A stretch of DNA of 64,000 bases from Heteronotia binoei (Eukaryota). The stretch is from assembly GCF_032191835.1 (NCBI RefSeq), contig NC_083226.1, forward strand, positions 21,762,001 to 21,826,000, in the 5' to 3' direction. This document shows positions 8,661-56,559 of the stretch, in pieces. The number at the start of each line of letters is the position of its first letter. The first letter of the stretch is position 1. Under the pieces are notes generated by a model. The model made no database searches, was not told where the DNA came from, and worked only from the letters and a program-made list of their open reading frames with translations. A program made the translations under genes and the position numbers.

Positions 8661-10084
8661 GGCGGGCTTGGCAGTATATACAGCTTAACTCTGCTTAAAA
8701 TTGCACTGGAAGGCATTTATATAATAAAAATCCATGAATATGCCAAAGAGAACATGGTCTATGCTATGCATTGACACATTTTGTGTTGTTAAAGCACAAA
8801 AACGAGGTTGGTAAGGAAGAAAACACTGCTTAAAATTTCCAGAAATTTTACACCTTGATTCATAATGTTTGCCAACATCAATCTCTCTTTGTTTTGTTGG
8901 CATCATTTCTAATAATTTTGGCTAGTGCCTGGCCAAAATTACCTTTGGCAAAGCCAGAATAAGACCTTTTTTTGCAGCAGGAACTCCTTTGCATATCAGG
9001 TCACACACCCCTGATGTAGCTAATCCTCCTGGAGCTTACAGTAGGCCCTGTACTAAGAGCCCTGTAAACTCTTGGAGGATTGGCTACATTAGGGGTGTGT
9101 GGCCTAATGTGCAAGAGTTCCTGGGAATGCTCTGTGACATTTTATAAAACCTCAAGGCAAAAATAGAGTTGGGAAAAGGAATATGAGTCTCTGACTGTCC
9201 ATGCAACATGACTGAATCTGAGCCTCCTGAGACAAGGGTTGGTTTATCAAGGTAGGAGATAAGGTATGGAGATTCCTGGGACACTGACTCAACCCAGCGT
9301 GACCAACAGACCATGCCTATCATGTTCTGCATTTTGACCCCATCAAGCAATCAAAGTCTAGTAAGAAACATACACAGACTCCATAGTTTGAATTAAAACT
9401 TCTTGAGCAGTTTATTGAAAGAAAAAGTTCAAAACTACAAGGAAGCAGAGGAAGAACTTAGGAGAGAAACAGAAGTACCTGAGCACATGGAGATTCAATT
9501 GAATTAGACCTTCAAGTTATGTTTTCTCTCCATCAGTGCCAACCTGTCCATTCTAATCTAAAGCTAAATAAAAAAATTATTCTAAACCTCGACACCCATA
9601 GCTAACAAATCAGAGGCCTCAGTGAAGGTAGCCAATTTTAGCCCTGAAGATTTTGTGGAGGTGTCTGGGGAAGGCAGAGTTTGGGGGAGGGGAGGAAACT
9701 CAGAAGGGATGTGATTCCATAGACTCTACCTTCCAAAGCTGCCATTTTCTCTAGAGAAACCAGTCTCTGCAATCTGGAGATCTATAGGCTGCATATTGGG
9801 AGATATCTGTTGATGGCTTGAATGAAGTTCTTGATGTGGAAGTGGAAAGTTGTTCTTGTTAGTTAGATACTTGATGCAAAGTGTTAAAATTTGTGCATAA
9901 AAATAAAAAGGGAGATCTTACTAGAGTTTACGATGGACTGAAAAAGTTGGTAGGCTTACAAGCAGGCCAATTTCAAATGGACAACTGGAGAGACAATGGT
10001 CCCTCCTTCCCTGGGGTCCTTCCCTGCCCACCTCATACTGCAGATATAGAGGCCCTGTAGAGCACGATGAAGACAGGAATAGCA

Positions 10085-10312: not shown

Positions 10313-12790
10313 ATATTAGGCCACACCCCTTGATGTAGCCAATCCTCCAAGAGTTTACAAGGCTCTTAGTACAGGGCCAACTGTAAGCTCTTGGAGGATT
10401 GGCTACATCAGGGGTGTAAGGCCTAATATGCAAAGGTATCACTGCTACAAAAAAAGCCCTAGGGGTAAAGATGGAACAAACTATCATGTCAAATCACCAT
10501 CCAGGGTAGGCAATGAATCATCTCCCAGCTGAAGGTATGAAGGCCTGGACAAAACAATAGACAGGCAGACAGACAGACAGATCTGTCCCCCAGCCCTCCA
10601 GAGGACATTCTTTCCCCTTTCTAAATGGAAAAATTTGACATTTGGGGACATAGTGATGAAAACTCCTGTAAAAAAAGACTTTCGCTTTGAGAGTGAGGGA
10701 AATTATTTGTAAGGCAAAGTTTTATTCATTTGGAATGTTTAGTATGAAGATTGTTTTTATGTATGACTATAGTATTGGTTAATCATTCCTGCATGAGACA
10801 AAATACGTTCACAACATATTTTCAAGAATGTGTTTATTATTTAAATATTACTAATCTTGTCCACAATTAATATGCTCATAATGTGTAGGATGAGAACATG
10901 CTATTTCAGTGTTTTCAAGTGTTACAAATGTTAATTTGATAGCCAGATGTGCTGCTATTCACTGTGTGACTGTCTAGCCAGATAAAACTCTTTTGTTATG
11001 TAAAAAAGATGCTTTCTGTTTTCAATTTTCATTTTTCCTCATTTCAAATAGCAAAAACTCCAGGTCCAAAGTAAATGTGGTGTCCTGGGGCTGCTAACAT
11101 TATTTTGAAATATTTTAAAAATCCCTCCATGGCTTGACCCCACCTCATGAAGTGACAAAACAGCCACTGTCCTTCAGTGAGTGTTCCAGCATCTGAAAAT
11201 CCATGGGTGCCGGCAGACGGGAGGGACAACAGCACAGCGCTACGGGCATGATCAGGGTAGGCCCCTCCAGACATTTTTAAATTACTTTAAAACAGCGGTG
11301 GCAGGGCTCACTTTGTAGCAGGAGCTTCTTTGCATATTTGGCCACACTCCTCTGGTGTAGCCAATCCTCCAAGAGATTAAAAGACTCTTCTTACAGGACC
11401 TACTGTACATTCTTGGAGGGTTGGCTACATCAGAGGTGTGTAGCCTAATATACAAATGAGCACCTGCTACAAAGTAAGCCCTGGGTGGTGGTGTCCACTT
11501 ATTAATATAGTTAACACATGTCCTTGAGACAAGGGTTGGTTCATCGGGGGATTAAATAAGGAATGGAGATTCCTGGAACACTGACTCAACCCAGCGTGAC
11601 CAAGGGTTATCATGTTGTACATTTTGACCTAATCAAGCAATCAAGTAAGAAAACCATAAAAAAGAAACAGACTCCATAGTTTGGAGTTTACTTCAGCAGG
11701 TTATTGAAAGAGAGTACAAAACTACACAAAAGCAGAAGAAGAACTCAGGAGAGGAACAGAAGTACCTGACTGCATAGAGATTCGATTGAATTGGACCTTC
11801 AGTTGAAGAAGAACTTCAATTGCAGTTATGTTTTCATCTCCATAAATTCCTGCCCATTCTAATCTAAAGATAAATTGCAAAATTATTCTAAGCTTATAAA
11901 GCTTAGACACCCAAAACTACCAATTCAGATGCCTCAGTTCAGGTTGCCACCTCCAGCCTGGGGAATTCCTGGAGATTTTGTGGAGGAGTCTGGGGGAGGC
12001 AGAATTTGGGGGATAAGAGGATACTCAAGAGCAGGGCCTTTTTTGAGCACAGGAACACACAAGAACGCAGTTTCAGCTGACTTGGCATCAGGGGTGTGTG
12101 GCCTAATATGCTAATGAGTTCCTGCTGGGCTTTTCCTACAAGAAAAGCCCTGCTCAAGAGGGATGTGATTCCATAGGACCTACCCTCCAAAGCTGATGTT
12201 TTCTCCAATGGAACCAATTTCTGTAATCTGGAGATCTCCAGGCCGCATTTTGGGACATCTCCATGCCATACACGGAAGTTGTCAACTCAGGACCCTCAGG
12301 AGAAGTCCAGGACTTCAGGATCTCTTCTCACCAGGTACCCTAGCAGCTTCATTGGGCCCTTCCAATCCTCTGGCTTTTCTTAATTTATTTGCTCCAGAGC
12401 TGGGCATAGAATTATTAATTGCATTTTAGTTTTCAGACATCCCTAATGGTTCCCAAAACACTGCCCTCTTTCTCCTTTCATTTTTGTTAGCTTGTTTGTT
12501 TAAAACATTTGTATGCTGCCTTCTACCCTATTAGGGCAGAAAGAGGTCCACAAACATTTTTTTTTAAAAAAAAACTTACATTTTCTCTGAATCAGAGAGA
12601 ACTGGAGGCTTTGGGTGTCCTCATAACATTTATCTACATATAAGCAGAATTCCAGTGGAAGCTTAAAGGCACTGGGTATACTGAGGGAAGGTTCACATCC
12701 CTGCCTGCCATGAAACTGAAGGGAAGATCTTGGATCAGTCAGTCACTAATCTACCTCATAGCATTATTGTGAAGTTAAGATGAAGAAGGG

Positions 12791-14570: not shown

Positions 14571-14837
14571 GTTATCAGGAAGGACTTGATTACTAGCACA
14601 ACAATCCTCAGGTGAGTTCTACTTATCTAAGCCCACTGTCTTTAATGGATTTTGATGGGAGTAACTCTTTTTAGGATTGCACTGTAAACCCATACCCTCT
14701 TCTGAAATGTCATCTTTGCATATGCTGCAGTGATGGTAAACATGATCTTTGCATTTGCTGTCAGATATGTTGATGTGGTATTCTTGAGAGATTTGTTGAC
14801 TTGGAATATTTTTGAAGTTCCATCTATTGGACACAAG

Positions 14838-15035
14838 AAGCTGCTTTATATAAAATCAGACCCTTAATCCACCAGAGTCAGTATTGTCTACTCAGACTGG
14901 CAGCAGTTCTCCAGGATCTCAGGCAGAGGTCTTTCACATCACTGGCTTCCTGATCCTTCGAACTGGAGATGCCAGGGATTGAACCTGGCATCTTCTGAAT
15001 GCCAAACAGTGGCTCTACCACTGAGTCACAGCCTC
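14838..15035 (-). mobile_element. tRNA-derived SINE with CR1-like tail
   Basis: B-box-like GGTTCAATCCC (rc GGGATTGAACC) and tRNA-like head at the right end. Related plus-strand copies at ~26545-26660 and ~31545-31670. Confidence 0.6.
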
Positions 15036-15803
15036 TTCCCAATTCAATATTCTTATTAGTTTTTGTTCAATGAGATTGAAAAGACTCTCGGTGGATTACT
15101 TCAATGAAGTTCTTGACTTTGTGTGGAAAGTTCTTCTTGTTAGTTGACTACTTAATGCAAAATATTACGTAATTTGTCCATAAAGAGGGATGTCTTATTA
15201 GAGTTCATTATGGAATGATACAGTTGGGAGACTTCCTACCTTTATAAGCAGACCTCACATAGGCAACAAACCAATTGCAAATGAACAACTGGAGGAACAA
15301 TGGCCGCTCCTTCCCTGGGGTCCCTCCCTGCCCACCTCTTCAGTTCTTCTCCTGCAGATCGAGAGGCTCAGTGGAGAAGGTGAAGACAGGTATAGCCATT
15401 GTGAGTTAATGATGAAGACGAGGTATTGACTGCTCAAAGCACCATCCAGGTGGGTTATGAATCACCCCCGGCTGGAGATATGAAGGTCTGGACAAAGCAA
15501 TATATATTTTCAATTGCAATTAAAACTATTTGGGAAATATTTTTGAAATATATATATATATATATTTGGGAAAATGTTTTTTTTTTCCCCAGAGGACATT
15601 CTTCCCCCAATTTCTAAAGGAAAAAAAATGGACATTTGGGGAAACACCGAAAAAAACTTTAATTTTCCCCCCTCTTTTGCAGTAAGGGAAATTATTTGTA
15701 AGACAGTTTTATTCATTTAGAAAGTGCAGAATAAAGACTGTTTTTATGTAAAACTATTTTCTATAGTATTAGTTAATCATTCCTGCATCAGCCAAAATAC
15801 TTA

Positions 15804-19846: not shown

Positions 19847-20849
19847 AGAACATAAGAGAAGCCATGTTGGATCAGGCCAATGGCCCATCCAGTCCAACAC
19901 TCTGTGTCACACAGTGGCCCCCAAAATTATATATACACACACACACACACACACACTGTGGCTAATAGCCACTGATTAGGGGTCCCAATCCCCCCGCTTT
20001 AGCGGGAGACTTCTGGGTTCCCAGCTTAATCTCCCGGTCTTCAAAAATTGAGAACCGGGGGGGTGGGGGGGTGGAGGGGGGGAGAACATACCTATAGAGC
20101 TCCTGAGCAGTTTGTAAAATCCCTGTCCCTTTAAGGCTGGGCAGGAAGGAGGAAACAGGAAGGGCTTCGGAGAACGGCCCCTCCCTTCTTTGCTTTCGTT
20201 TTCACAGCAGGCACAGTTCTCCGGAAGAAGACCAAGTAAGTATTTGTGTGTGTGTGTGAGAGAGGGAGGGGGCAGGGAGGGGGATTCCCTCGTATGGAGG
20301 CCCTCCCCCCCTTTAGAAAGCGTGGGGGGGGAAATGTCTACTGGGCACTCTATTATTCCCTATGGAGAATGATTCCCATAGGGAATAATAGGGAATTGAT
20401 CCGTGGGTATTGGGGGCTCTGGGGGGGCTATTTTTTGAGGTAGAGGCACCAGATTTTTAGTATAGCATCTAGTGCCTCTCCCCAAAATACCCCCCAAGTT
20501 TCAAAACGATTGGACCAGAGGGTCCAATTCTATGAGCCCCAAAATATGGTGCCCCTATCCTTAATTATTTCCTATGGAAGAAAGGCATTTAAAAAGGTGA
20601 GCTGTCCCTTTAAATGTGATGGCCAGAACTCCCTTGGAGTTCAATTATGCTTGTCACACCCTTGTTCCTGGCTCCACCCCCAGTGTCTCCTGGCTCCACC
20701 CCCAAAGTCTCCTGGCTCCGCCCCCAAAGTCCCCAGATTTTTCTTTAATTGGACTTGGCAACCCTACCACTGATGGACCTCTGCTCCATATTTTTATCTA
20801 AACCCCTTTTGAAGGTGGCCATGCTTGTGGCCGCCACCACCTCCTGTGG
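19847..20849 (-). mobile_element. CR1 3' fragment with nested hAT MITE
   Basis: CR1 tail split by the MITE; flanked by a CATGTT duplication. Confidence 0.82.
19977..20766. mobile_element. Non-autonomous hAT element (TAGGG-type TIR)
   Basis: Imperfect TIRs TAGGGGTCCCAA / TTGGCAACCCTA; 8-bp TSD CCACTGAT. Partial relatives at ~17955-18280 and ~48050-48361. Confidence 0.88.
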
Positions 20850-21627
20850 CATGTTCTACATTGTGACCTCACCAAGAATCAACGTCTAGTAAGAAACCAG
20901 TCAAAAAGAAACAGACTCTATAGTTCAGGGCTATTTTTGTAGAAAAAAAACAGCAGCAACTCATATACATATTAGGCCACCCCCCCTGATGTCACCATCG
21001 TTTTGCACAGGGCTTTTTTTTGTAGAAAAAGCCCAGCAGGAGCTCATTTGGCTATTAGGCCACACCCCCTGACATCAAGCCAGCCAGAACTGCGTTCCTG
21101 TGCGTTCCTGCTTTTAAAAAGCTGTGTTTTTAATTGAAACTGCTTTAGCAGTTTATTGAATGAGAAAACACAAAACCACCAGGAAGCAAAAGAAGAACTT
21201 AGGAGAGGAACAGAAGTACCTGATTAAATGGAGATTCAATTGAATTGGACCTACAGGCCTTTTTTCATCTCCATAAATGCCAGCCAGAGCTAGGGTGACC
21301 ATAATGTCTGAAGGCCAGCCAGGGACACCTTTGGGGGGGGGAAGGTAGGGGTGCGTGTACGCAAAGCGTGCGCGCGCCGCCGGAAACAGGAAGTGACGTC
21401 ACTTCCGGTGACGTCATGCCACCGCCGGAAACAGGAAGTGACACCACTTCCTGTGACATCATTTCCCCCGCGTCACCTGCCGGAAACGGGAAGTGACATC
21501 ACTTCCTGTGACATCACTTCCCCCAAATGACATCATTTCCCCCAAATGCCACTGCCGGAAACAGGAAGTGACTTCACAGCACTTCCTGTGACGTCCCCAA
21601 AAATCCCCCAAATATCACCGCCGGAAA

Positions 21628-22525
21628 CAATTTTGTTCTCAGATCCTGTATTTACTTCATCAGTATATGGGATAAGGCACTTTCTCAACTGTGCTGCATA
21701 ATGCAGCCTATTTATTTTGTCCTGTTTGCTCTGTTGGCTCTATCTGCGCCACCTTCATCACTTTCGGGGTGTGGATCCCCCAGTGGGGTGGTCTCGCGAC
21801 TCCCTCTGCCGGCTGTTTCTGATAGCCCTGCGCCCCCTCTTTCATTTGATATGTGTCCCGTGCGGGTGCCACCCTCCCGCCAGGAGATGCCGCAAAATGA
21901 GCCCCCTTGAGGCTTATGGCGGCAGGGCTCGGGGGAAGCGAGCTAGACTGCTGTTCTTTTGAGGGGTTATAGAGTGTTTCGAGCCCGTCCCTGTGGCATC
22001 GGTCCCATCGTTGTGGGACCCAGGGGGCCAGCGCAGCAGCACGCCGAAGCAGCCTGTCACAGGTCGAGATGCAGGACAGGAACCCGGAAGTGACCGACAG
22101 GCTGCTTCAGCGTGCCGCTGCGCCGGCCCCCTGGGCCCCACAACGATGGGACCGATGCCACAGGGACGGGCTCGAAACACTCTATGACCCCTCAAAAGAA
22201 CAGCAGTCTAGCTCGCTTCCCCCGAGCCCTGCCGCCATAAGCCTCAAGGGGGCTCATTTTGCGGCATCTCCCGGCGGGAGGGTGGCATCCGCACGGGACA
22301 CATATCAAATGAAAGAGGGGCGCAGGGCTATCAGAAACAGCCGGCGGAGGGAGTCGCGAGACCACCCCACTGGGGGATCCACACCCCGAAAGTGATGAAG
22401 GTGGCGCAGATAGAGCCAACAGAGCAAACAGGACAAAATAAATAGGCTGCATTATGCAGCACAGTTGAGAAAGTGCCTTATCCCATATACTGATGAAGTA
22501 AATACAGGATCTGAGAACAAAATTG
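21628..22525. repeat. Long inverted repeat (~430-bp arms, 37-bp spacer)
   Basis: 21628-22058 is the near-perfect reverse complement of 22096-22525. Confidence 0.95.
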
Positions 22526-22532
22526 CACCAGA

Positions 22533-22876
22533 AGACACAAACACAAAGCTCCCTTACACTGAATCAGTGCTTGGGTCCACCAAAGTCAGTATTGTCCACT
22601 CCAGTCACAAACACAAAGCTCCCTTACACTGAATCAGTGCTTGGGTCCACCAAAGTCAGTATTGTCTACTCCAGTCACAAACACAAAGCTCCCTTACACT
22701 GAATCAGTGCTTGGGTCCACCAAAGTCAGTATTGTCTACTCCAGTCACAAACACAAAGCTCCCTTACACTGAATCAGTGCTTGGGTCCACCAAAGTCAGT
22801 ATTGTCCACTCCAGTCACAAACACAAAGCTCCCTTACACTGAATCAGTGCTTGGGTCCACCAAAGTCAGTATTGTC
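22533..22876. repeat. 70-bp tandem repeat (~5 copies)
   Basis: AGTCACAAACACAAAGCTCCC...GTCCACTCC at 22603, 22673, 22743, 22813. Confidence 0.95.
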
Positions 22877-23116
22877 ACATAAGAACATAAGAGAAGCCCT
22901 GTTGGATCAGGCCAGTGGCCCATCCAGTCCAACACTCTGCGTCACATAAGAACATAAGAGAAGCCCTGTTGGATCAGGCCAGTGGCCCATCCAGTCCAAC
23001 ACACTGTGTCACATAAGAACATAAGAGAAGCCCTGTTGGATCAGGCCAGTGGCCCATCCAGTCCAACACACTGTGTCACATAAGAACATAAGAGAAGCCC
23101 TGTTGGATCAGGCCAG
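22877..23116. repeat. 67-bp tandem repeat of the CR1 3' tail (runs into gap)
   Basis: ACATAAGAACATAAGAGAAGCCCTGTTGGATCAGGCCAGTGGCCCATCCAGTCCAACAC..., period 67. Confidence 0.95.
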
Positions 23117-23761
23117 NNNNNNNNNNNNNNNNNNNNNNNNNNNNNNNNNNNNNNNNNNNNNNNNNNNNNNNNNNNNNNNNNNNNNNNNNNNNNNNNNNNN
23201 NNNNNNNNNNNNNNNNNNNNNNNNNNNNNNNNNNNNNNNNNNNNNNNNNNNNNNNNNNNNNNNNNNNNNNNNNNNNNNNNNNNNNNNNNNNNNNNNNNNN
23301 NNNNNNNNNNNNNNNNNNNNNNNNNNNNNNNNNNNNNNNNNNNNNNNNNNNNNNNNNNNNNNNNNNNNNNNNNNNNNNNNNNNNNNNNNNNNNNNNNNNN
23401 NNNNNNNNNNNNNNNNNNNNNNNNNNNNNNNNNNNNNNNNNNNNNNNNNNNNNNNNNNNNNNNNNNNNNNNNNNNNNNNNNNNNNNNNNNNNNNNNNNNN
23501 NNNNNNNNNNNNNNNNNNNNNNNNNNNNNNNNNNNNNNNNNNNNNNNNNNNNNNNNNNNNNNNNNNNNNNNNNNNNNNNNNNNNNNNNNNNNNNNNNNNN
23601 NNNNNNNNNNNNNNNNNNNNNNNNNNNNNNNNNNNNNNNNNNNNNNNNNNNNNNNNNNNNNNNNNNNNNNNNNNNNNNNNNNNNNNNNNNNNNNNNNNNN
23701 NNNNNNNNNNNNNNNNNNNNNNNNNNNNNNNNNNNNNNNNNNNNNNNNNNNNNNNNNNNNN
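23117..23761. other. Assembly gap (N)
   Basis: Run of N; further gaps at 53967-54391 and 55587-55959. Confidence 0.99.
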
Positions 23762-23869
23762 GCCAGCCGCCCCCCCCCCCCGCGCTTTTGGCTTACCTGG
23801 ATCCAGGGCGGTGGCGGCCTCTCCTCCGGGCTGCTGGCGGGGCTGGCGGCGGCTGCGGAGGCCGGAGAG

Positions 23870-24392
23870 GCCGGCGCTGGTCTCTGGAGGCCTCCAGGGA
23901 CCAGCGCTGGCCTCTCCACGCTGCCTCCGCTGGTCTCTGGAGGCCTCCAGGGACCAGCGCAGGCCTCTCCACGATGCCTCCGCTGGCCTCTGGAGGCCTC
24001 CAGGGACCAGCGCCGGCCTCTCCACGAAGCCTCCGCTGGCCTCTGGAGGCCTCCAGGGACCAGCGCCGGCCTCTCCACGAAGCCTCCGCTGGCCTCTGGA
24101 GGCCTCCAGGGACCAGCGCCGGCCTCTCCACGAAGCCTCCGCTGGCCTCTGGAGGCCTCCAGGGACCAGCGCCGGCCTCTCCGCTGCCGGCGCTGGCCTC
24201 TGGAGGCCTCCAGGTTCCAGCGCCAGCCTCTCCACGCTGCCGGCGCTGGCCTCTGGAGGCCTCCAGGGACCAGCGCCGGCCTCTCCACGCTGCCGGCGCT
24301 GGCCTCTGGAGGCCTCCAGGGACCAGCGCCGGTCTCTCCACGCTGCCGGCGCTGGCCTCTGGAGGCCTCCAGGGACCAGCGCCGGCCTCTCC
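23870..24392. repeat. GC-rich ~53-bp minisatellite
   Basis: GGCCTCTGGAGGCCTCCAGGGACCAGCGCCGGCCTCTCCACGAAGCCTCCGCT and variants, ~10 copies. Confidence 0.93.
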
Positions 24393-24646
24393 GGACCCCG
24401 CGCGCGGGCGGGGAAGGCGGGGAGTGAGGCAGCCAGCGTCCCTGCGCGTGCGCACACAGCTGTGCGCACGCGCAGGGACGCTGGCTGCCTCACTCCCCGC
24501 CTTCCCGGCCCGCGCGCGCGGCCCCCCGGCTCCCCGCTGGCTATACCGGGACTTTGTAATGGTCCCGGTATAGGCAGCCCGGGAGCCGGGAATTGGTGGC
24601 CAGAACCGGGAAAGTCCCGGGAGACCGGGACGGTCTGGCCACCCTA

Positions 24647-25372
24647 ATTGGCAAGAATAATTGTCATTATTCGTATCTAATGGTTCCCATCTTGTGGATA
24701 TTTCTAAACACCACCACATCTTGGTTTGCCACCTGGCTCAGCGTTTTCTACTTGGCAAAGATCGCCACCTTCTCCCACCCTGTTTTCCTCCAAGTGAAGC
24801 AAAGATTTTCAGGACTGGTGCCCTGGTTGCTTCTGGGATCAGTTGTCTTCTCTGCTATTACGACTCTTGTTGTGGTCGCAAGCTTGAGCGACGGCTTCTC
24901 TATGTGTGATTCCAACAAATCATTTTTAAACATCAGTGATTCAGAAATTACACCCCCTGACTTATATATGTACCTAGCTTTTCTAGCTGCTGTCCCAAAT
25001 CTCATTCCTTTAATGATATTTTTGTCATCGTCTGTCTTGTTAATGACTTCTCTGTGGATGCACACAAGACGTATGCAACGGAATGGAATTGGCATCAATG
25101 ATCTCAGCACTCAAGCTCACATGACTGCCATCAAAGCTCTGGCTTCCTTCGCTGTTCTGTACCTGTCTAGTTTTTTAGCAGACACTGCTCAGGCAGTAAT
25201 GATCTGGAAAAACGTGGGTGACACTTGGCTATTTATGATGCTTAGTATCATAACTGTGTCTTGTCCTTCTGGACATGCCGTTATCCTGATACTACTAAAT
25301 CCCAAACAAAAACAGGCATGGGTCAAGATGCTGCTTCTCTTAAAATGCTGCTCTGGTGAAGTGCCTGTTTAA
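24647..25372 (+). pseudogene. TAS2R: 5'-truncated TAS2R (ECL1 to C-terminus), fused to a transposon end
   Basis: Homology to the 29488 gene starts abruptly at ATTGGCAAG, directly after the TIR ...GGCCACCCTA. TM1-TM2 are absent and the remaining frame is open. Confidence 0.85.
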
Positions 25373-26111
25373 AACCTATCACTGGACCACAGAGACAGGA
25401 CATTCTCTTTCCCAAGAAGGACCCTGAAAAACTCTTGGAGCACAATCCTTCAGGAAGCTCTTCATGGGTAGACATGCTCTTCCTCCTCTTTCACAGAAAG
25501 ATGCACGATGGGTGGATGATCACCTAGCTATTTCATCAGAATAAATTATTCTACATTGATGATGCATAGGTCAAATCATTCTTTTTTTCTGCTTCAGATA
25601 TGGTCAGAAAAATGCTGCTCTTGATTTGGACACAATGGCAGCGGGTGATATGTAAGTGATGATTTTATATAGAGAGAATTGAGGTTCAGAAATGCATTTA
25701 TTTCCCAGTTTTTTTGCTATCCTGTGGTTGTTTTCATGTACAAGTTTTACTGGAGATGCCATAAGAAAACTTATACAGTGAAGTCTTTATTACTTATGAT
25801 TTCTTTTATAAGTAATGACCATTCTTAAAATAAATATATGTCTAGAATCTATATATCAATTTTATTTTTCCTATATACGTATGTTATTGATATTATAGTT
25901 ATATTGCAACTGTCCTACTATTTTGGCTACCATCTGATATTGTTTTAATTGTTAGTCTATATTTCTTATTTTAAGTGTTTTATGTATTATTTTTTAGGTG
26001 TCTTGTTTATATTACTGTCCCCCTGCTTGCAGGGCAGCACGGGATAAAAATCAAATAAACTAATCTAAATGGATGATAGTTATAATTAGATTCAGACCAA
26101 ATGGTTAATAC

Positions 26112-38974: not shown

Positions 38975-41900
38975 TGTAATGTACTGGGAGACGAGACGTG
39001 GTAAAGGCATTGGTCTTTAATCGCTGGTACATTACAGAACTGGGGAACACGCGGCCGGGTCCGCTAATATATACATGCACCCCGGATCAACCCCCCTGCT
39101 GGCCAGCCCAATCCTGGCCAGTTAAACTTCCCGCGCTTGGTCTTGATTGGCGGTGACTTTTCCCGCGCTGCGCCAGGTAACCCAAGGACGTCCCGGCTTA
39201 CGCGGCGCGGGTGCAGAGTCCGATACTCAACACTCCTCCCCCCTTAGTTTAAACCACATAGTCCCGGAGGTACGCCGGTGCTCTCCGTTCCCGTGTCGAT
39301 CTCCTCGGGGTCGCTCTTGGTGCGGAGGCTGGTTCCGTTGTGGGCGATGCTGCTTCTGGCTGCGGGATGTTGGGGTCTGTTTCAGGCTCCGGCTCTGGTT
39401 CGGTGTCTCTGGGGGCGTCATAAGTGGGTAGTTCCTGTATTGGCGAGCGCCCTTCCGGACCTTCGGTTGCCCGCGGTTCCCTATTCCCTACCTCCTCTGT
39501 TTCTTCGGGTAGGGTGCGGCGGCGCAGCTGATCTATGTGCCGCCTTAGTACCTGGCCCCCTTCGGTGGTCACCTCGTATGACCTGGAACCTGTCACCCTA
39601 AGGACTCTCCCCGCGACCCACTCGGGACCGCTTGCGAAGTTCTTCGCGTATACCGGGTCACCCGGAAAGAACCCCCGCACCGCCTCCCGGACCTCTGGGG
39701 ACCCGCGGACCTCGGGGGCCCGGTCGGGGTGCAGCCTGTCTAGGCGTGTTGTCAGTTTCCTCCCCATAAGCAGTTCTGCGGGGCTGGATCCCGTTATAGG
39801 GTTTGGGGTGATCCTGTTGTGGAACAGGAAGGCTGAGAGGCGGTGGTCCCAATCCCCTTGTACTATTCTCCCCAGTGCTTCCTTGGTGGTCCGCACCATC
39901 CGCTCTGCCTGGCCGTTGGTGGCCGGATGGAAGGGTGCGGATCTTATGTGTCGTATGAGGTACCTCTCCGTGAACTCCCGGAATTCCCGGGAGGTGAATG
40001 CAGTACCGTTATCCGTCACCAGGGTGTCTGGGATCCCGTGCGTGCATAGGACCCTCCTGAGTGCCCGGACGGCTGCTGCTGTGGAGGTCGAGGCTACTGG
40101 AATCACCTCCAGCCATTTTGTGTAGGCATCCACAAGTATAAAAAAGATTTGGCCCTGATACGGGCCTGCAAAATCTAAGTGGAGGCGGGACCATGGTCGC
40201 CTGTTAGACTCCCATCTGTGGACCGGGGCTGATGGGGGATCGGGCCGGGATTCTTGGCAGGGTTGGCACCTCCTCACCCACCCCTCTATCTCCTCATCCA
40301 TGCCCGGCCACCACACATAACTACGGGCCAGGGCTTTCATCCTCACGATGCCCGGGTGGGTCTCGTGGAGGTCTTCCAGCACCTGCTTGCGCAAGGGGGG
40401 GGGAACCACCACCCGGCTGCCCCAAAGCACACACCCCTTGTGGGTTGATAGCTCGTCCTTCCTGGACGCGAACGGCCTGAACGCGTCTTCGACTTTGCCT
40501 GATGGCCACCCCCTCCCCACCCAGTCCCTGACCCGTGCCAGGATGCGGTCCCTCCCTGTTGCCCGAGCCACCTCCGCCGCGTGCAGGGGGCGCTCGGGGA
40601 GCGATTCAATGAGCATTACCCCATGTGCAGGGGCGGGATCCGGTTCTGTCATGGGGAGCGGCAGGCGGCTGAGGGCATCGGCGTGTCCCATGGCTTTACC
40701 CGGGCGGTGGACCAGTTCATACGTGTAGGAGTTCAGGAACTGGTTCCACCTCAGGACCCTCTGGGATAGGATTTGGGGGGTCTGACGGTCTGGAGCTAGG
40801 AGGCCCAGGAGCGGCTTGTGGTCCGTGGCGATGGTGAAACGCCTACCGTAGAGGTAGTCGTTGAACTTGTGCACCCCCGCCACGATCGCCAAGGCCTCCT
40901 TGTCAATTTGAGCGTAGTTCCGCTCCGCTGGAGATAGAGTCCGTGAATAGTACGCGACTGGCACTTCCCTCCCGTCCGGGAGTTGGTGCCCCAAAACCGC
41001 TCCTACTCCGTAGGGGGAGGCGTCGCAAGCTAGGATCAGGGGTAGGTTTTCGTCGTAGTGGTGAAGTACCGCGTTAGAGACCAAGAGGTCCTTCACTGCT
41101 TGGAACGCCGCGGCTTGGCGTTGGCCCCAGACCCACGGGGCCTGTTTATCCAGCAAACGGTGCAACGGTTCCGCTACGGCGGCTTTGTGCGGTAGGAACG
41201 TGTGATAAAAGTTCAACAATCCTAAAAAACTCTGTAGTTCTGCCTTGCATTTGGGCGCAGGAGCCTGGACTATGGCCCTGGTCTTGTCCGCCGTCGGGTG
41301 TATTCCCGCCGCGTCCACGGCGAACCCCAGGAACTCCACTCGCGGGACCCCTAACAAACATTTCTCCTTTTTGACTCTCAGCCCCGCCGCTTGGAACCGC
41401 CTGAGGACCTCGCGCAGGCGGCAGCAGAACTCTCCTTCATTGGGGGCGGCGATTAAAACGTCGTCAAAGAAGGGTTGAACTCCGGGGATCCCTTTAAGGA
41501 GAGAGTCCATGATGCTCTGGAATATCCCCGGAGCCACACTGACCCCGAACTGCAGCCGTTTAACCCTGAACGCGCCCCTGTGGGTCACGATCGTCTGCGC
41601 CTCCGCTGTCTTAGCGTCGACCGGCAGTTGCTGGTATGCTTGTGCTAAGTCCAGCTTCCCAAAAACCTTCGCCCCGGCTAGCGCTGCTAGGACGTGGCTG
41701 ACCACCGGGACTGGGTAGGGGTTGTCTTGTAGCGCCTTATTGATCGTGCACTTGTAGTCAGCGCAGATCCTCACCTCCCCATTGGGTTTGACGGGCGTTA
41801 CTATGGGGGTTTCCCATTCCGCGTATGTTACCGGTTCTAGGACGCCCTGGGCCGTTAGGCGGTCCAGTTCTGCCTCTATTTTCGGCTTAAGGGCGAACGG

Positions 41901-45422: not shown

Positions 45423-46109
45423 AACCTACTACTGGACCACAGAGATAGGCATTCTCTTTCACAAGAAGGACCCTGATAAACTCTTGCAGTGCAATCCTAA
45501 AGGAAGCTCTTTATGGGTAGATATGCTATTCTTTTTTCAGAGAAACGTGTACATAGGGGTGGATGATCTCTTTGACTGGCTTTTTCAGCAGAATGAATTA
45601 ATGTACACTGATAACACATTGGTCAAATCATTCTTTTCTCTCCTTCAGAATTGATCATGTTAGAAATGCTGCTTTCAATTTGGATACAATGGCAGAAGGT
45701 GATACAGACGTGATTATAGGTATCTTGAAAAATTTATATTTCTATAGAAATACAGTTATTTTCTAGATTTTGGTATACTGAGGTCATTATCATGGATATG
45801 CTGCTAACATAAAAACTTATACATTGAAATCTTTATTACTTAGAATTTCTTTTATAATGTTCTGATGACTGTTCAGTCATCATTCGTTCTTTTATAATGT
45901 TCTGATGACAGGATATCGCTATGCAGTAACTTAACCCTTTCTGGTAAAGATTTGCATCTCAACAGTCTCGACACAGTGTCCTACCTCTCCAGATGTTTTC
46001 CTAAATCAAAGGCCATAGCGCTGTGTTCTGCTGGGTGGATATCACTGAAAGGACAGCTTGGGGCAAACTGCAAACATCACAGAAGAAACAGTTTTGCTTT
46101 GTGCTCAGA

Positions 46110-47726
46110 ATGATGGTGCCTTCCATATTGATAATAATCAGTTGTATTCTTCTGGTTAGTAAAACTCTTGTTGGAATGGTCACAAATGGATTTATTGCCC
46201 TTATGAATTACATTGACTGGTTCAGAAGCAGGAAACAATCCCCAAATGACCAAATTTTGACCTGTCTTGTCTTGTCCAGACTTTCATGGCTGGGATTTGT
46301 GAGTCTGCATATAACTACGTTCTTCTTTTTTTATTGGCACGCATAATTGTCATTATTTCTTCATAATGGTTCCCACCTTGTGGATATTTATGAACACCAC
46401 CACTATTTGGTTTGCCACCTGCCTCAGCATTTGCTACTTGGCAATGATTGCCATGTTCTCCCACCCTGTTTTCCTCCAAGTGAAGCAAAGATTTTCAGGA
46501 CTTGTGCCCCCGTTGCTTCTGGGATCAGTTGTCTTCTCTGCTATTATGGCTCTTGTTGTGGTCGCAAGCTTGAGCAATGGCTTCTTGATGTGTGATTCCA
46601 ACAAATCACATCAGTGATTCAGAAATTAAACCCCCTGACTTATACATGTTCTCAGCTTTTTTAGCTACTGTCCCAAATCTCATTCCTTTAATGATACTTT
46701 TGTAATTGCCCATCTTGTGAATGACCTCTCTGTGGATGCACACAAGATGTATGCAAGGCAATGGAATTGGCATCAAGGATCTCAACACTCAAGCTCACAG
46801 GACTGCTATCACTGTCAAGACAGTGTGCGTTTGCAATAAAAAAGGCCAACGCCATGCTGGGAATTATTAGGAAGGGAATTGAAAACAAATCAGCCAGTAT
46901 CATAATGCCCCCATATAAATCGATGGTGCGGTCTCATTTGGAGTACTGTGTGCAATTCTGGTCACCGCACCTCAAAAAGGATATTATAGCATTGGAGAAA
47001 GTCCAGAAAAGGGCAACTAGAATGATTAAAGGGCTGGAGCACTTTCCCTATGAAGAAAGGTTGAAACGCTTGGGACTCTTTAGCTTGGAGAAACGTCGAC
47101 TGCGGGGTGACTTGATAGAGGTTTACAAGATAATGCATGGGATGGGGAAAGTAGAGAAAGAAGTACTTTTCTCCCTTTCTCACAATACAAGAACTCGTGG
47201 GCATTCGATGAAATTGCTGAGCAGGCAGGTTAAAACGGATAAAAGGAAGTACTTCTTCACCCAAAGGGTGATTAACATGTGGAATTCACTGCCACAGGAG
47301 GTGGTGGCGGTCACAAGTATAGCCACCTTCAAGAGGGGGTTAGATAAAAATATGGAGCACAGGTCCATCAGTGGCTATTAGCCACAGTGTATGTGTATAT
47401 ATAAAATTTTTTGCCACTGTGTGACACAGAGTGTTGGACTGGATGGGCCGTTGGCCTGATCCAACATGGCTTCTCTTATGTTCTTAAAGCTCTGGCTTCC
47501 TTTGCTTTTTTTGTACATGTTTAGTTTTTTAGCGGTCACTACTCAGGCAATACTGATCTGGAATGACATGGAGCACAACTGGCTATTTATACTGCTTGGC
47601 ATCATATCTGTTTCTTGTCCTTCTGGACATGCCATTATACTGATACTAGTAAATCCCAAACTCAAAGAGGCATGGGTCAGGATGGTGCTTCGCTTAAAAT
47701 GCTGCTCTGGTGAAGTGCCTTCTTAA
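46110..47726 (+). pseudogene. TAS2R: TAS2R pseudogene with two frameshifts, a premature stop and a CR1 insertion
   Basis: +1 T in the T-run at ~46325-46332; 8-bp deletion at ~46609; TCA>TAA at ~46705; CR1 inserted in ICL3/TM6 at 46812-47485; C-terminus resumes at 47486. Confidence 0.9.
46812..47485 (+). mobile_element. CR1 LINE 3' fragment inserted in TAS2R
   Basis: RT C-terminal ORF to 47381 plus tail ending TTATGTTCTT; TAS2R coding sequence resumes on both sides. Confidence 0.93.
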
Positions 47727-53115: not shown

Positions 53116-56100
53116 TAGGGTGGCCAGACCGTCCCGGTCTCCCGGGACTTTCCCGGTTCTGGCCACCAATTCCCGGCTCCCGGCTGCCTATACCGGGACC
53201 ATTACAAAGTCCCGGTATAGCCAGCGGGGAGCCGGCGGGCCGCGCGCGCGGGCCGGGAAGGCGGGGAGTGAGGCAGCCAGCGTCCCTGCGCGTGCGCACA
53301 GCTGTGTGCGCACGCGCAGGGACGCTGGCTGCCTCACTCCTCGCCTTCCCCGCCCGCGCGCGGGGTCCGGAGAGGCCAACGCTGGTCCCTGGAGGCCTCC
53401 AGAGGCCAGCGGAGGCATCGTGGAGAGGCCGGCGCTGGTCCCTGGAGGCCTCCAGAGGCCAGCGGAGGCATCGTGGAGAGGCCGGCGCTGGTCCCTGGAG
53501 GCCTCCAGAGGCCAGCGGAGGCATCGTGGAGAGGCCGGCGCTGGTCCCTGGAGGCCTCCAGAGGGCAGCGGAGGCTTCGTGGAGAGGCCGGCGCTGGTCC
53601 CTGGAGGCCTCCAGAGGGCAGCGGAGGCTTCGTGGAGAGGCCGGCGCTGGTCCCTGGAGGCCTCCAGAGGGCAGCGGAGGCTTCGTGGAGAGGCCGGCGC
53701 TGGTCCCTGGAGGCCTCCAGAGGGCAGCGGAGGCTTCGTGGAGAGGCCGGCGCTGGTCCCTGGAGGCCTCCGCTGGTCCCTGGAGGCCTCCAGAGACCAG
53801 CGGAGGCAGCGTGGAGAGGCCAGCGCTGGTCCCTGGAGGCCTCCAGAGACCAGCGCCGGCCTCTCCGGCCTCCGCAGCCGCCGCCAGCCCCGCCAGCAGC
53901 CCGGAGGAGAGGCCGCCACCCGCCCTGGATCCAGGTAAGCCAAAAGCGCGGGGGGGGGCGGCTGGCNNNNNNNNNNNNNNNNNNNNNNNNNNNNNNNNNN
54001 NNNNNNNNNNNNNNNNNNNNNNNNNNNNNNNNNNNNNNNNNNNNNNNNNNNNNNNNNNNNNNNNNNNNNNNNNNNNNNNNNNNNNNNNNNNNNNNNNNNN
54101 NNNNNNNNNNNNNNNNNNNNNNNNNNNNNNNNNNNNNNNNNNNNNNNNNNNNNNNNNNNNNNNNNNNNNNNNNNNNNNNNNNNNNNNNNNNNNNNNNNNN
54201 NNNNNNNNNNNNNNNNNNNNNNNNNNNNNNNNNNNNNNNNNNNNNNNNNNNNNNNNNNNNNNNNNNNNNNNNNNNNNNNNNNNNNNNNNNNNNNNNNNNN
54301 NNNNNNNNNNNNNNNNNNNNNNNNNNNNNNNNNNNNNNNNNNNNNNNNNNNNNNNNNNNNNNNNNNNNNNNNNNNNNNNNNNNNNNNNNNNCTGGCCTGA
54401 TCCAACAGGGCTTCTCTTATGTTCTTATGTGACACAGTGTGTTGGACTGGATGGGCCACTGGCCTGATCCAACAGGGCTTCTCTTATGTTCTTATGTGAC
54501 ACAGTGTGTTGGACTGGATGGGCCACTGGCCTGATCCAACAGGGCTTCTCTTATGTTCTTATGTGACACAGTGTGTTGGACTGGATGGGCCACTGGCCTG
54601 ATCCAACAGGGCTTCTCTTATGTTCTTATGTGACGCAGAGTGTTGGACTGGATGGGCCACTGGCCTGATCCAACAGGGCTTCTCTTATGTTCTTATGTGA
54701 CACAGTGTGTTGGACTGGATGGGCCACTGGCCTGATCCAACAGGGCTTCTCTTATGTTCTTATGTGACGCAGAGTGTTGGACTGGATGGGCCACTGGCCT
54801 GATCCAACAGGGCTTCTCTTATGTTCTTATGTGACAATACTGATTTTGGTGGACCCAAGCACTGATTCAGTGTAAGGGAGCTTTGTGTTTGTGACTGGAG
54901 TAGACAATACTGACTTTGGTGGACCCAAGCACTGATTCAGTGTAAGGGAGCTTTGTGTTTGTGACTGGAGTAGACAATACTGACTTTGGTGGACCCAAGC
55001 ACTGATTCAGTGTAAGGGAGCTTTGTGTTTGTGACTGGAGTGGACAATACTGACTTTGGTGGACCCAAGCACTGATTCAGTGTAAGGGAGCTTTGTGTTT
55101 GTGTCTTCTGGTGCAATTTTGTTCTCAGATCCTGTATTTACTTCATCAGTATATGGGATAAGGCACTTTCTCAACTGTGCTGCATAATGCAGCCTATTTA
55201 TTTTGTCCTGTTTGCTCTGTTGGCTCTATCTGCGCCACCTTCATCACTTTCGGGGTGTGGATCCCCAGTGGGGTGGTCTCGCGACTCCCTCCGCCGGCTG
55301 TTTCTGATAGCCCTGCGCCCCCTCTTTCATTTGATATGTGTCCCGTGCGGATGCCACCCTCCCGCCGGGAGATGCCGCAAAATGAGCCCCCTTGAGGCTT
55401 ATGGCGGCAGGGCTCGGGGGAAGCGAGCTAGACTGCTGTTCTTTTGAGGGGTCATAGAGTGTTTCGAGCCCGTCCCTGTGGCATCAGTCCCATCGTTGTG
55501 GGGCCCAGGGGGCCGGCGCAGCGGCACGCTGAAGCAGCCTGTCGGTCACTTCCGGGTTCCTGTCCTGCATCTCGACCTGTGACAAGNNNNNNNNNNNNNN
55601 NNNNNNNNNNNNNNNNNNNNNNNNNNNNNNNNNNNNNNNNNNNNNNNNNNNNNNNNNNNNNNNNNNNNNNNNNNNNNNNNNNNNNNNNNNNNNNNNNNNN
55701 NNNNNNNNNNNNNNNNNNNNNNNNNNNNNNNNNNNNNNNNNNNNNNNNNNNNNNNNNNNNNNNNNNNNNNNNNNNNNNNNNNNNNNNNNNNNNNNNNNNN
55801 NNNNNNNNNNNNNNNNNNNNNNNNNNNNNNNNNNNNNNNNNNNNNNNNNNNNNNNNNNNNNNNNNNNNNNNNNNNNNNNNNNNNNNNNNNNNNNNNNNNN
55901 NNNNNNNNNNNNNNNNNNNNNNNNNNNNNNNNNNNNNNNNNNNNNNNNNNNNNNNNNNNCCCCCGCCAGCCGCCCCCCCCCCCCCCCCCCCCCCCCCCCC
56001 GTGCTTTTGGCTTACCTGGATCCAGGGCGGGTGGCGGCCTCTCCTCCGGGCTGCTGGCGGGGCTGGCGGCGGCTGCGGAGGCCGGAGAGGCCGGCGCTGG

Positions 56101-56559
56101 TCTCTGGAGGCCTCCAGGGACCAGCGGAGGCCTCTCCACAAAGCCTCCGCTGGCCTCTGGAGGCCTCCAGGGACCAGCGGAGACCTCTCCACGCTGCCGG
56201 CGCTGGCCTCTGGAGGCCTCCAGGGACCAGCGCCGGCCTCTCCACGCTGCCGGCGCTGGCCTCTGGAGGCCTCCAGGGACCAGCGCCGGCCTCTTCGCTG
56301 CTGGCGCTGGCCTCTGGAGGCCTCCAGGGACCAGCGGAGGCCTCTCCACGAAATGATGTCACAGGAAGTGGTGTCACTTCCTGTTTCCGGCAGTGGCATG
56401 ACGTCACCGGAAGTGACGTCACCGGAAGTGACGTCACCGGAAGTGACGTCACTTCCTGTTTCCGGCGGCGAGCGCAGCGCTCCGCGCACGCACACCCCTA
56501 CCTTCCACCCCCCCCCCCCAGGTGTCCCTGGCTGGCCTTCAGACATTATGGTCACCCTA
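53116..56559 (-). mobile_element. Composite hAT/Foldback-like element, copy 2 (inverted)
   Basis: Same TIRs and modules as 21291-24646 in reverse: 53-bp arrays at both ends, 67-bp array 54392-54836, 70-bp array 54837-55103, palindrome arm and loop 55112-55586; two N gaps. Confidence 0.8.

What the first reader, a model, noticed from the sequence alone, without database searches (positions are those of the whole stretch)
21291..24646. Composite hAT-ended, Foldback-like transposon built almost entirely of repeat modules
Seen: between hAT-type TIRs (TAGGGTGACCA...TGGCCACCCTA) there is no coding sequence. The modules are ETS/CRE repeats, a ~900-bp palindrome, a 70-bp array, a 67-bp array, a GC-rich 53-bp array with an internal GGAGGCCTCC palindrome, and a perfect 46-bp stem (24411-24456/24461-24506). 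A second inverted copy with the same modules at 53116-56559 shows that the composite moved or duplicated as a unit. Known: Foldback elements have modular tandem-repeat arms, and hATs have short TIRs with 8-bp TSDs. Inference: an undescribed non-autonomous family that carries and disperses minisatellites and cruciform-forming DNA.
Basis: partly seen in the sequence, partly recalled or inferred. Interest (0 to 1): 0.78.

Follow-up and report, generated by a model that had tools for sequence, protein, structure and literature searches.

The report
Repeat-filled hAT-type transposon, two copies
Two nearly identical 3.4-kb copies of a cut-and-paste (hAT-type) transposon with no transposase gene, filled with palindromes and short tandem arrays, lie in a lizard bitter-taste-receptor gene cluster; this kind of element is known, and the odd points are that neither copy has the usual target-site duplication and one copy abuts a half-deleted receptor gene.

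Summary
The two copies (21291-24646 +, 53116-56559 -) stop being alike exactly at 11-bp ends, TAGGGTGACCA and TGGCCACCCTA. These ends are 9/11 identical to the TAGGGTTGCCA ends of two neighbouring elements that do have 8-bp target-site duplications (TSDs).

The copies share module order and the order of unit variants inside the 70-bp and 67-bp arrays, so the composite was copied as one unit. The 67-bp and 70-bp units are the 3' tails of a CR1-like LINE and a tRNA-type SINE. The other modules are CpG-rich and palindromic. No readable ORF has a Pfam domain.

Two things weaken the hAT filing. Neither copy has a TSD in any pairing of the four flanks. Copy 1's flanks were never neighbours: the right one is a TAS2R gene lacking its first ~81 codons, and the left one is unrelated intergenic DNA.

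Continuity across the gaps could not be tested, because no public run covers the unique flanks. Foldback membership fails: the terminal repeats are short and the arrays are internal.

Earlier notes of this scan report similar repeat-filled hAT shells on other pieces of this genome.

Verdict: a new member of a known kind, of moderate to low interest.

The parts
21291..21376 (+). Copy 1 left end: 11-bp terminal inverted repeat TAGGGTGACCA (21291-21301) plus a unique subterminal stretch with a G-run
   Evidence: The first 40 bp are identical in copy 2, after which identity over the 86 bp falls to 90.6%.
21377..21627 (+). Short repeats carrying ETS-like (GGAAGT) and CRE (TGACGTCA) motifs; each core is an 18-bp palindrome
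   Evidence: CpG o/e is 0.78 against 0.19-0.29 in the flanks.
21628..22525 (.). 898-bp palindrome: arms 21628-22058 and 22096-22525, 37-nt spacer
   Evidence: The arms are 98.1% alike. The right arm is 99.8% alike between the two copies.
22536..22876 (-). 70-bp array, 4.9 units; each unit is the 3' tail of a tRNA-type SINE, sense on the minus strand
   Evidence: (alignment A3 to the SINE at 14831-15040)
22873..23116 (-). 67-bp array, at least 3.6 units, cut by the gap; each unit is the last 67 bp of a CR1-like LINE 3' UTR, sense on the minus strand
   Evidence: (alignment A2 to the tails at 2699, 12791, 19845 and 47420)
23117..23761 (.). Assembly gap of 645 N; not read, continuity not shown
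   Evidence: No record bridges it.
23762..23874 (-). C-run and GC-rich stretch; read on the minus strand it ends in a splice-donor-like CAG|GTAAGC (23791-23799)
   Evidence: It is 100% alike between the copies. The exon reading is inference only.
23875..24392 (.). 53-bp GC-rich array, 9.8 units; each unit is a roughly 48-bp near-palindrome centred on CTGGAGGCCTCCAG
24393..24524 (.). Hairpin with 64-nt arms that includes the perfect 46-bp stem
24525..24646 (+). Copy 1 right subterminal region; nine CCGGGA/TCCCGG hexamers lie between 24503 and 24630. Right terminal inverted repeat TGGCCACCCTA (24636-24646)
   Evidence: The background rate of the hexamer is 0.12 per 200 bp.
24647..25372 (+). Truncated TAS2R gene abutting copy 1; Pfam TAS2R profile positions 82-302 of 303
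53116..53966 (-). Copy 2 right part: terminal repeat, CCGGGA region, hairpin, 53-bp array (9 units), GC-rich stretch with the donor-like site
53967..54391 (.). Copy 2 gap of 425 N, at the same internal position as copy 1's gap and with the same letters on each edge
54392..55586 (-). Copy 2 67-bp array (at least 6.6 units), 70-bp array (3.9 units), right palindrome arm and palindrome centre
55587..55959 (.). Copy 2 second gap of 373 N, where the left palindrome arm would be expected
55960..56352 (-). Module found only in copy 2: an inverted copy of the GC-rich stretch with the donor-like site and 5 units of the 53-bp array
   Evidence: (95.5% to the right-hand version)
56353..56559 (-). Copy 2 ETS/CRE repeats (fewer units than in copy 1) and left end with terminal repeat TAGGGTGACCA

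Best explanation
The unit is a transposase-less member of a multicopy DNA-transposon family with Ac-like, hAT-type ends: 11-bp imperfect terminal repeats beginning TAGGG, and a hexamer-rich subterminal region on one side. It would be moved in trans by a hAT transposase encoded elsewhere.

Its interior is not a designed cargo. It records repair and slippage:
- a CpG-rich, promoter-like block (ETS/CRE sites, GC-rich stretch, splice-donor-like site), which is either the remnant of the parent element's 5' region or captured host DNA;
- two severely 5'-truncated retroelement tails, one CR1-like and one SINE/LINE-type, each grown into a minisatellite;
- several palindromes, made by fold-back (hairpin-primed) synthesis during gap repair.

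The whole composite was then copied as one piece to a second site 29 kb away.

The missing TSDs are best explained by rearrangement at the element ends after or during insertion. For copy 1 this would be a deletion that removed the first ~81 codons of a TAS2R gene and the adjoining intergenic DNA. It could have arisen by transposase-induced adjacent deletion or alternative transposition, or by recombination between two direct copies.

Shown: the anatomy, the shared ends, the unit-wise duplication, the retroelement origin of two arrays, the non-contiguous flanks, and multicopy status in other runs.

Inferred: the transposase, the repair origin of the palindromes, and the way the flanks were lost.
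For: - Likeness between the copies stops exactly at both termini.
- The ends match each other at 10/11 positions. They match at 9/11 the TAGGGTTGCCA ends of element 19977-20766, which has a perfect TSD CCACTGAT and an empty paralogous site at 2821-2828, and of element 48842-49059, whose TSD matches at 7/8.
- TAS2R paralogues have no TA before the junction, so the terminal TA belongs to the element.
- Nine CCGGGA/TCCCGG hexamers lie in about 130 bp at the right end (24503-24630), against 0.12 per 200 bp in the window.
- The copies share the order of unit variants in the 70-bp and 67-bp arrays. The palindrome arms differ by 1.9%, but the right arm differs by only 0.2% between the copies. So the arrays and the palindrome are older than the duplication.
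- The 67-bp unit aligns end to end with CR1-like 3' tails, and the 70-bp unit with a SINE 3' tail.
- CpG o/e is 0.6-0.9 in the non-retroelement modules, against 0.19-0.29 in the flanks.
- Two DNA runs that do not cover the single-copy flanks still assemble contigs of 523 and 486 bp that join the ETS repeats to the left palindrome arm. In a third run, contigs run past 24646 into other sequence.
- No Pfam domain was found in any readable ORF, and the 108-aa palindrome ORF has no homologue.
- hAT elements are documented to cause deletions and inversions at their ends (PMC3239180, PMC8225341) and to sit at inversion breakpoints (PMC12368964).
Against: - No 8-bp TSD in either copy, nor in any cross-pairing of the four flanks, direct or reverse-complemented. 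Two out of two is more than a single accident.
- The left end has only the 11-bp repeat and no CCGGGA motifs.
- No autonomous partner was found, and no transposase fragment inside.
- Every copy is joined across at least one assembly gap whose continuity I could not test.
- The left 86 bp differ by 9.4% between the copies while the rest differs by at most 0.8%. A simple recent transposition does not predict this.
Confidence: 0.6

Rival explanations
1. Assembly collapse or mis-join. Each 'copy' is two or more near-identical elements lying close together, merged by the short-read assembler across the N gaps, with the DNA between them dropped. The elements would then be ordinary hAT insertions with TSDs, and the 'missing' TAS2R half would sit on an unplaced contig.
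For: - Each copy is held together only through a gap of estimated size.
- The homologous gaps in both copies start at the same phase of the 67-bp unit and resume at the same letter, so the contig ends were set by the repeat itself.
- A collapse of two direct copies gives exactly the signature seen: intact ends, no TSD and non-contiguous flanks.
- No read or contig bridges the gap.
Against: - The same module order across the gap was obtained at two loci.
- The copies differ in array lengths and in one whole module, so they were not simply built from one read pile.
- Swapping the middle contig's orientation does not restore TSDs either.
Confidence: 0.15
2. The copies were not integrated by transposase. 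An excised element was captured by end-joining, or one copy served as template, during repair of a chromosome break in the TAS2R cluster. That would give an insertion without a TSD together with loss of target DNA.
For: No TSD at either copy, and target DNA is missing on both sides of copy 1. The two copies are only 29 kb apart and 99-100% alike over most of their length.
Against: All four termini are complete to the last base, which end-joining seldom leaves. Templated repair has no reason to start and stop exactly at the terminal repeats. Contigs in another run show the same right end next to other DNA, which points to normal dispersal.
Confidence: 0.12
3. It is a true Foldback-type or Mutator-type element, or belongs to another superfamily (Tc1/mariner with a TA TSD, or PIF/Harbinger), and the resemblance to hAT ends is coincidental.
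For: It has a modular build of tandem repeats and palindromes, as in Tetris (PMC4079207). Copy 2 has roughly 370-bp inverted blocks on either side of the centre. TA is present at all four ends.
Against: - The terminal repeats are 11 bp, not hundreds of bp, and the arrays do not reach the termini.
- There is no 8-10-bp TSD.
- TAS2R paralogues show no TA at the target, so TA is part of the element.
- The 3-bp flanks do not match each other: CTA/TAA and ATA/TAC.
- The ends are 9/11 identical to proven hAT-type neighbours.
Confidence: 0.05

Closest known systems
Ac/Ds-type non-autonomous hAT elements (maize Ds and relatives)
   Same: 11-bp imperfect terminal repeats that begin TAGGG or CAGGG, and short hexamer repeats in a subterminal region (Ac facts from my own knowledge). 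The interior is rearranged and lacks a transposase. The ends are associated with deletions and inversions of flanking DNA (PMC3239180, PMC8225341, PMC3744419).
   Different: No 8-bp TSD at either copy. The hexamer repeats lie at one end only. The interior is dominated by palindromes and minisatellites, not by a simple deletion derivative. No autonomous partner is known.
Tetris / Foldback elements of Drosophila (PMC4079207)
   Same: Non-autonomous and modular, with internal tandem repeats that vary in number between copies. Many copies are rearranged. Related to a small element found at inversion breakpoints.
   Different: Tetris has terminal inverted repeats of up to 1.7 kb that contain the tandem repeats, and 8-10-bp TSDs. 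Here the terminal repeats are 11 bp, the arrays are internal, and two of them are unpaired retroelement tails.
Tandem-repeat-containing MITEs (DTC84 / pearl family, PMC3879986)
   Same: A cassette of short inverted-repeat ends around core tandem repeats. Each repeat holds a palindrome, and the variants keep a fixed order in the array while the copy number changes.
   Different: Those elements are small, carry one repeat type and have an AA TSD. This one is 3.4 kb, carries four arrays of different origin, and has hAT-like ends.
hAT MITE clusters at Atlantic cod inversion breakpoints (PMC12368964)
   Same: Vertebrate hAT-derived non-autonomous elements that lie exactly where gene order or orientation changes, explained by ectopic recombination.
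   Different: There the elements are tandem MITE insertions at megabase-scale inversions. Here a single composite element sits at the strand switch of a TAS2R cluster, and no inversion was demonstrated.
Other repeat-filled or promoter-carrying hAT shells noted by this scan in the same genome (s1-333682, s1-322614, s1-333703, s1-321106, s1-328447)
   Same: By their titles: hAT-bounded and non-coding, carrying GC-rich palindromic arrays, CR1-tail arrays and promoter-like CpG-rich DNA.
   Different: I could not read those sequences, so I do not know whether they belong to the same family. At least some of them were reported as clean insertions.

Membership tests
hAT superfamily (non-autonomous member) | Short terminal inverted repeats fitting 5'-YARNG | tested here: met
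   TAGGGTGACCA and TAGGGTGGCCA, 10/11 alike, lie at the exact limits of likeness between the two copies.
hAT superfamily (non-autonomous member) | 8-bp target-site duplication | tested here: not met
   The flanks are GCCAGAGC/ATTGGCAA for copy 1 and TGGATATA/CCTGCTTT for copy 2. Every pairing matches at 1/8, and no exact duplication of 2-10 bp exists. For copy 1 the flanks are shown to be non-contiguous, which can explain the failure there.
hAT superfamily (non-autonomous member) | Ends related to those of elements with proven hAT-type insertion | tested here: met
   Element 19977-20766 has a perfect TSD CCACTGAT and an empty site at 2821-2828. Element 48842-49059 has a 7/8 TSD. Both end in TAGGGTTGCCA-type repeats, 9/11 identical to this element's ends.
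hAT superfamily (non-autonomous member) | Autonomous partner encoding a hAT transposase with the same ends | not testable with these tools
   No genome-wide search is on hand. Nine ORFs elsewhere in the window were scanned, and none had a hAT domain in Pfam.
hAT superfamily (non-autonomous member) | Subterminal short repeats (transposase binding sites) at both ends | tested here: inconclusive
   Nine CCGGGA/TCCCGG motifs lie between 24503 and 24630 at the right end, and none in the left 200 bp.
Foldback elements | Long terminal inverted repeats (hundreds of bp to kb) that reach the termini | tested here: not met
   Inverted likeness of the two ends stops after 11 bp. Definition taken from PMC4079207.
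Foldback elements | Tandem repeats forming part of both terminal arms | tested here: not met
   In copy 1 each array occurs once and is internal. Copy 2 has the 53-bp array on both sides in inverted orientation (5 and 9 units), but 200-480 bp inside the ends.
MITE | Small size (under about 800 bp) and high copy number | tested here: not met
   About 3.4 kb including the gaps. Copy number is only roughly indicated: depths of 13-27 in runs with no coverage of the single-copy flanks.
Tc1/mariner | TA target-site duplication | tested here: not met
   Four TAS2R paralogues read ...TTTTCT|ATTGG at the junction, with no TA. The TA is therefore part of the element.

The most novel reading that the evidence does not exclude
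The family is a mobile promoter cassette. Its ETS/CRE array, CpG-rich stretch and splice-donor-like site would drive outward transcripts. Insertion without a TSD, with loss of neighbouring DNA, would be the family's rule and not an accident, making it a recurrent agent of gene loss and strand switching in the TAS2R cluster.
Probability: 0.07. Interest if true: 0.6.

Novelty: new member of a known kind. Interest (0 to 1): 0.3.

Why it matters
This is a clear vertebrate example of how a cut-and-paste transposon shell gathers promoter-like DNA, retroelement tails and palindromes, turns them into minisatellites, and carries them to new sites.

One copy marks the exact point where a bitter-taste-receptor gene lost its 5' third and where the gene cluster changes strand. 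It is therefore a candidate case of transposon-linked gene loss in a fast-evolving receptor family.

If the absence of target-site duplications proved to be the rule for the family, that would say something new about how such elements integrate. With two copies, both interrupted by assembly gaps, this cannot be claimed.

Tried and rejected
- Gap continuity. Four public runs were laid on 20900-25400. None covers the unique flanks or bridges the gap, so there is no verdict. I did not try to infer the unread letters.
- Expression. Raw RNA reads cover the left half on both strands at low depth. The family is multicopy and the TAS2R flank is silent, so there is no verdict on promoter activity.
- TSD rescue. 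I tried cross-pairing of flanks, as expected after recombination between the two inverted copies or after a flipped contig, and reverse-complement pairings, as expected after alternative transposition. None matched.
- A TAS2R 5' half next to any element end: none in the window.
- An empty site for copy 2 from paralogous DNA: none found.
- Rfam: only sub-threshold hairpin look-alikes of microRNA models.
- Pfam on element ORFs: nothing above threshold.
- Word-based protein search with the 108-aa palindrome ORF: no hit.
- Exact-pattern scans of metagenome contigs with both termini: 0 hits, as expected for host DNA.
- Literature search for the terminal strings: only chance primer matches.
- PIF/Harbinger and Tc1/mariner readings of the ends: rejected from the flanks.
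Full report
SETTING. The window is a TAS2R (bitter taste receptor) gene cluster in a repeat-rich vertebrate genome. Intact or nearly intact TAS2R ORFs lie on the minus strand up to 14431 and on the plus strand from 24647 onward. The repeats are of reptile type: CR1-like LINE tails, a tRNA-type SINE, and a Ty3/Gypsy element. Earlier notes of this scan call the genome a gecko. I did not verify the species.

OBSERVATION.
- The ends are TAGGGTGACCA (21291-21301) and TGGCCACCCTA (24636-24646), 10/11 inverted matches.
- From left to right the interior holds:
  - ETS/CRE short repeats at 21377-21627. All six TGACGTCA sites of the window lie in the two copies.
  - An 898-bp palindrome with 431-bp arms that are 98% alike.
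  - A 70-bp array of 4.9 units, and a 67-bp array that runs into the gap.
  - The 645-N gap.
  - A GC-rich stretch.
  - A 53-bp array of 9.8 units, each a near-palindrome around CTGGAGGCCTCCAG.
  - A hairpin containing a perfect 46-bp stem.
  - A 122-bp right subterminal region.
- The second copy, at 53116-56559 on the minus strand, has the same order.

THE GAPS.
- Copy 1 has one gap and copy 2 has two.
- The homologous gaps of the two copies begin at the same phase of a 67-bp unit and resume at the same letter. The contig ends were therefore set by the sequence itself.
- I laid four public runs on 20900-25400. None covers the single-copy flanks and no record bridges the gap, so continuity is untested.
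- Element length and the statement 'no coding sequence' therefore hold only for what is readable. At the estimated sizes (645, 425 and 373 N) no gap could hold a transposase gene.

IS IT ONE UNIT?
- Likeness between the copies ends exactly at TAGGG... on the left and ...CCCTA on the right. The flanks beyond share nothing.
- The palindrome's right arm, the GC-rich stretch and the right end are 99.2-100% alike between the copies.
- The 70-bp array has unit variants in the order C,T,T,C in copy 1 and C,T,T in copy 2. The 67-bp array runs a,b,b in copy 1 and a,b,a,b,b,b in copy 2.
- The 53-bp arrays share first and last units but differ in between.
- The palindrome arms differ from each other by 1.9%, while the same arm differs by only 0.2% between the copies.
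- So the arrays and the palindrome existed before the duplication, and the composite was copied as a whole, with later gain and loss of units.
- Copy 2 has one extra module: an inverted copy of the GC-rich stretch plus five 53-bp units at 55986-56352. This gives copy 2 a more symmetric, fold-back look than copy 1.

ORIGIN OF THE MODULES.
- The 67-bp unit, read on the minus strand, aligns end to end with the last 67 bp of a CR1-like LINE 3' UTR. Four dispersed copies of that tail lie in the window, one of them directly downstream of a reverse-transcriptase C-terminal ORF.
- The 70-bp unit aligns at about 76% with the 3' end of a tRNA-type SINE at 14831-15040.
- Both arrays are therefore amplified 3' tails of retroelements, both in sense on the minus strand. 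This agrees with an earlier first-reader note (s1-345564), and I checked it here.
- The other modules are CpG-rich, with CpG o/e of 0.6-0.9 against 0.19-0.29 in the flanks, and all are palindromic.
- In copy 2 the order from the left end is ETS/CRE sites, GC-rich array, then a stretch ending in CAG|GTAAGC. This resembles a promoter, a 5' exon and a splice donor.
- The neighbouring element 19977-20766 has a similar layout and shares the 12-mer GGAAACAGGAAG. That hints that this block is a remnant of the parent transposon's 5' region and not a captured host promoter. This is inference only: a nine-letter donor match and one shared 12-mer are weak.
- No readable ORF has a Pfam domain, and the longest non-repetitive ORF (108 aa, in the palindrome) has no homologue in the word-indexed protein search.

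WHICH KIND OF ELEMENT?
- The ends fit the hAT rule YARNG. By my own knowledge they have the same form as the 11-bp imperfect repeats of maize Ac.
- Two neighbours in the window carry TAGGGTTGCCA-type ends, 9/11 identical to these, and are proven hAT-type insertions. Element 19977-20766 has a perfect 8-bp TSD (CCACTGAT) and an empty paralogous site in the CR1 tail at 2821-2828. Element 48842-49059 has a 7/8 TSD.
- Nine CCGGGA/TCCCGG hexamers lie in about 130 bp at the right end (24503-24630), against 0.12 per 200 bp in the window. The left end has none.
- TAS2R paralogues read ...TTTTCT|ATTGG at the junction, so the terminal TA belongs to the element. That excludes a TA duplication.

THE PROBLEM: NO TSD.
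- The 8-bp flanks match at 1/8 in every pairing of the four ends, direct or reverse-complemented. No exact duplication of 2-10 bp exists.
- For copy 1 the reason is visible. The right flank aligns with four TAS2R paralogues starting within the first few bases after the element (exactly at 24647 for two of them), which corresponds to Pfam profile position 82 of 303. The first ~81 codons and the upstream region are nowhere nearby.
- The left flank is homologous to intergenic DNA at 9387-9549 and 11691-11845. The continuation of that DNA is also absent on the other side of the element.
- The two flanks were therefore never neighbours, and the junction coincides with the strand switch of the cluster. 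This agrees with first-reader note s1-345529, tested here.
- The truncated gene is 93.7% alike to its nearest paralogue, while the two element copies are over 99% alike over most of their length. The truncation is therefore tied to the element and not to the older gene duplication.
- For copy 2 no paralogous empty site exists in the window.

HOW THE FLANKS WERE LOST. This cannot be decided here. The options are:
- A deletion starting at the element end, or alternative transposition, as documented for Ac/Ds (PMC3239180, PMC8225341, PMC3744419).
- Recombination between two direct copies (compare the hAT MITEs at cod inversion breakpoints, PMC12368964).
- Capture of an excised element at a chromosome break.
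- An assembly collapse of two close copies across the gap.

EVIDENCE FROM OUTSIDE THE WINDOW.
- Two DNA-type runs do not cover the single-copy flanks at all, yet they assemble contigs of 523 bp (21495-22017) and 486 bp (21479-21963), with 1.3-1.9% differences. These join the ETS repeats to the left palindrome arm.
- One contig links the left end to the ETS block, with a 68-bp stretch replaced.
- In a third run, two contigs carry the right end and then run into other DNA beyond 24646.
- The family is therefore multicopy, with the same right boundary at other sites.
- The 53-bp GC array is almost uncovered, as expected for GC-rich hairpin DNA in short reads.
- Earlier notes of the scan describe similar composites on other pieces of this genome: s1-333682 (CR1-tail array, palindromic GC array, promoter-like DNA), s1-322614 and s1-333703. 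I could not read those sequences and count them as leads only.

UNEXPLAINED. The left 86 bp differ by 9.4% between the copies, and the ETS block differs in unit number, while the remaining roughly 3 kb differ by at most 0.8%. Either the right part has been homogenised by gene conversion between the two inverted copies, which would make the copies older than they look, or the CpG-rich left part mutates much faster. Claims about the element's age are therefore uncertain.

COMPARISON WITH KNOWN SYSTEMS.
- It works like a Ds-type non-autonomous hAT.
- Its modular, repeat-laden, rearrangement-prone build parallels Tetris/Foldback (PMC4079207) and tandem-repeat-containing MITEs (PMC3879986).
- It fails the defining Foldback feature, long terminal repeats made of tandem repeats.
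- Membership in hAT is supported by the ends and by proven relatives in the same window, but the TSD criterion is not met. I therefore file it as 'hAT-type by its ends, membership not complete'.

VERDICT. This is a real feature, correctly described, and a new member of a known kind that is common in this genome according to earlier notes. The points worth following up are the absence of TSDs at both copies and the TAS2R truncation at the strand switch. Both need long reads before anything unusual can be claimed.

Noticed in passing
window 19977-20766: A 790-bp non-coding hAT-type element (ends TAGGGGTCCCA / TGGCAACCCTA) with a perfect 8-bp TSD, CCACTGAT, inserted in a CR1-like tail. The uninterrupted paralogous tail at 2790-2850 shows the empty site. 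It carries an ETS-like GGAAACAGGAAG and a donor-like CAAG|GTAAGT about 170-270 bp from its left end.
   Followed up: partly
window 48842-49059: A 218-bp hAT MITE (TAGGGTTGCCA ... TGGCAAGCCTA) with a 7/8 TSD (TGAGTGCC / GGAGTGCC). A related right end lies at 48019-48358.
   Followed up: partly
window 45908-47762: A TAS2R pseudogene split at paralogue position 30187 by a 5'-truncated CR1-like insertion of about 675 bp (46812-47485). The insertion includes a reverse-transcriptase C-terminal ORF and the same 3' tail that forms the 67-bp array.
   Followed up: partly
window 39249-43250 (-): An open 1333-aa Ty3/Gypsy pol-type ORF (protease, RT, RNase H, integrase by Pfam) in a GC-rich block at 39-43 kb. 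It looks like a young LTR retrotransposon.
   Followed up: no
window 24593-25372 (+): An open frame runs from inside the element's right end straight into the truncated TAS2R. It has no ATG until after the junction, so a receptor lacking its first ~81 codons is the most it could encode.
   Followed up: no
window 24592-24646: The last 55 bp of the element are themselves a small palindrome. A degenerate inverted copy of the right terminal repeat (TTGGTGGCCAGA) faces the true end (DNA fold, z = -11.9 for 24525-24646).
   Followed up: partly
window 21291-21640 versus 56340-56559: The left 86 bp of the two copies differ by 9.4% and the ETS block differs in unit number, while the rest of the element differs by at most 0.8%. 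This may reflect gene conversion over the right part or fast CpG decay on the left.
   Followed up: partly
window 61535-63529 (+) and 59977-60474 (+): A 664-aa ORF and a 165-aa ORF without Pfam matches. From memory, the second recalls the N-terminal region of hAT transposases; this is unverified.
   Followed up: no
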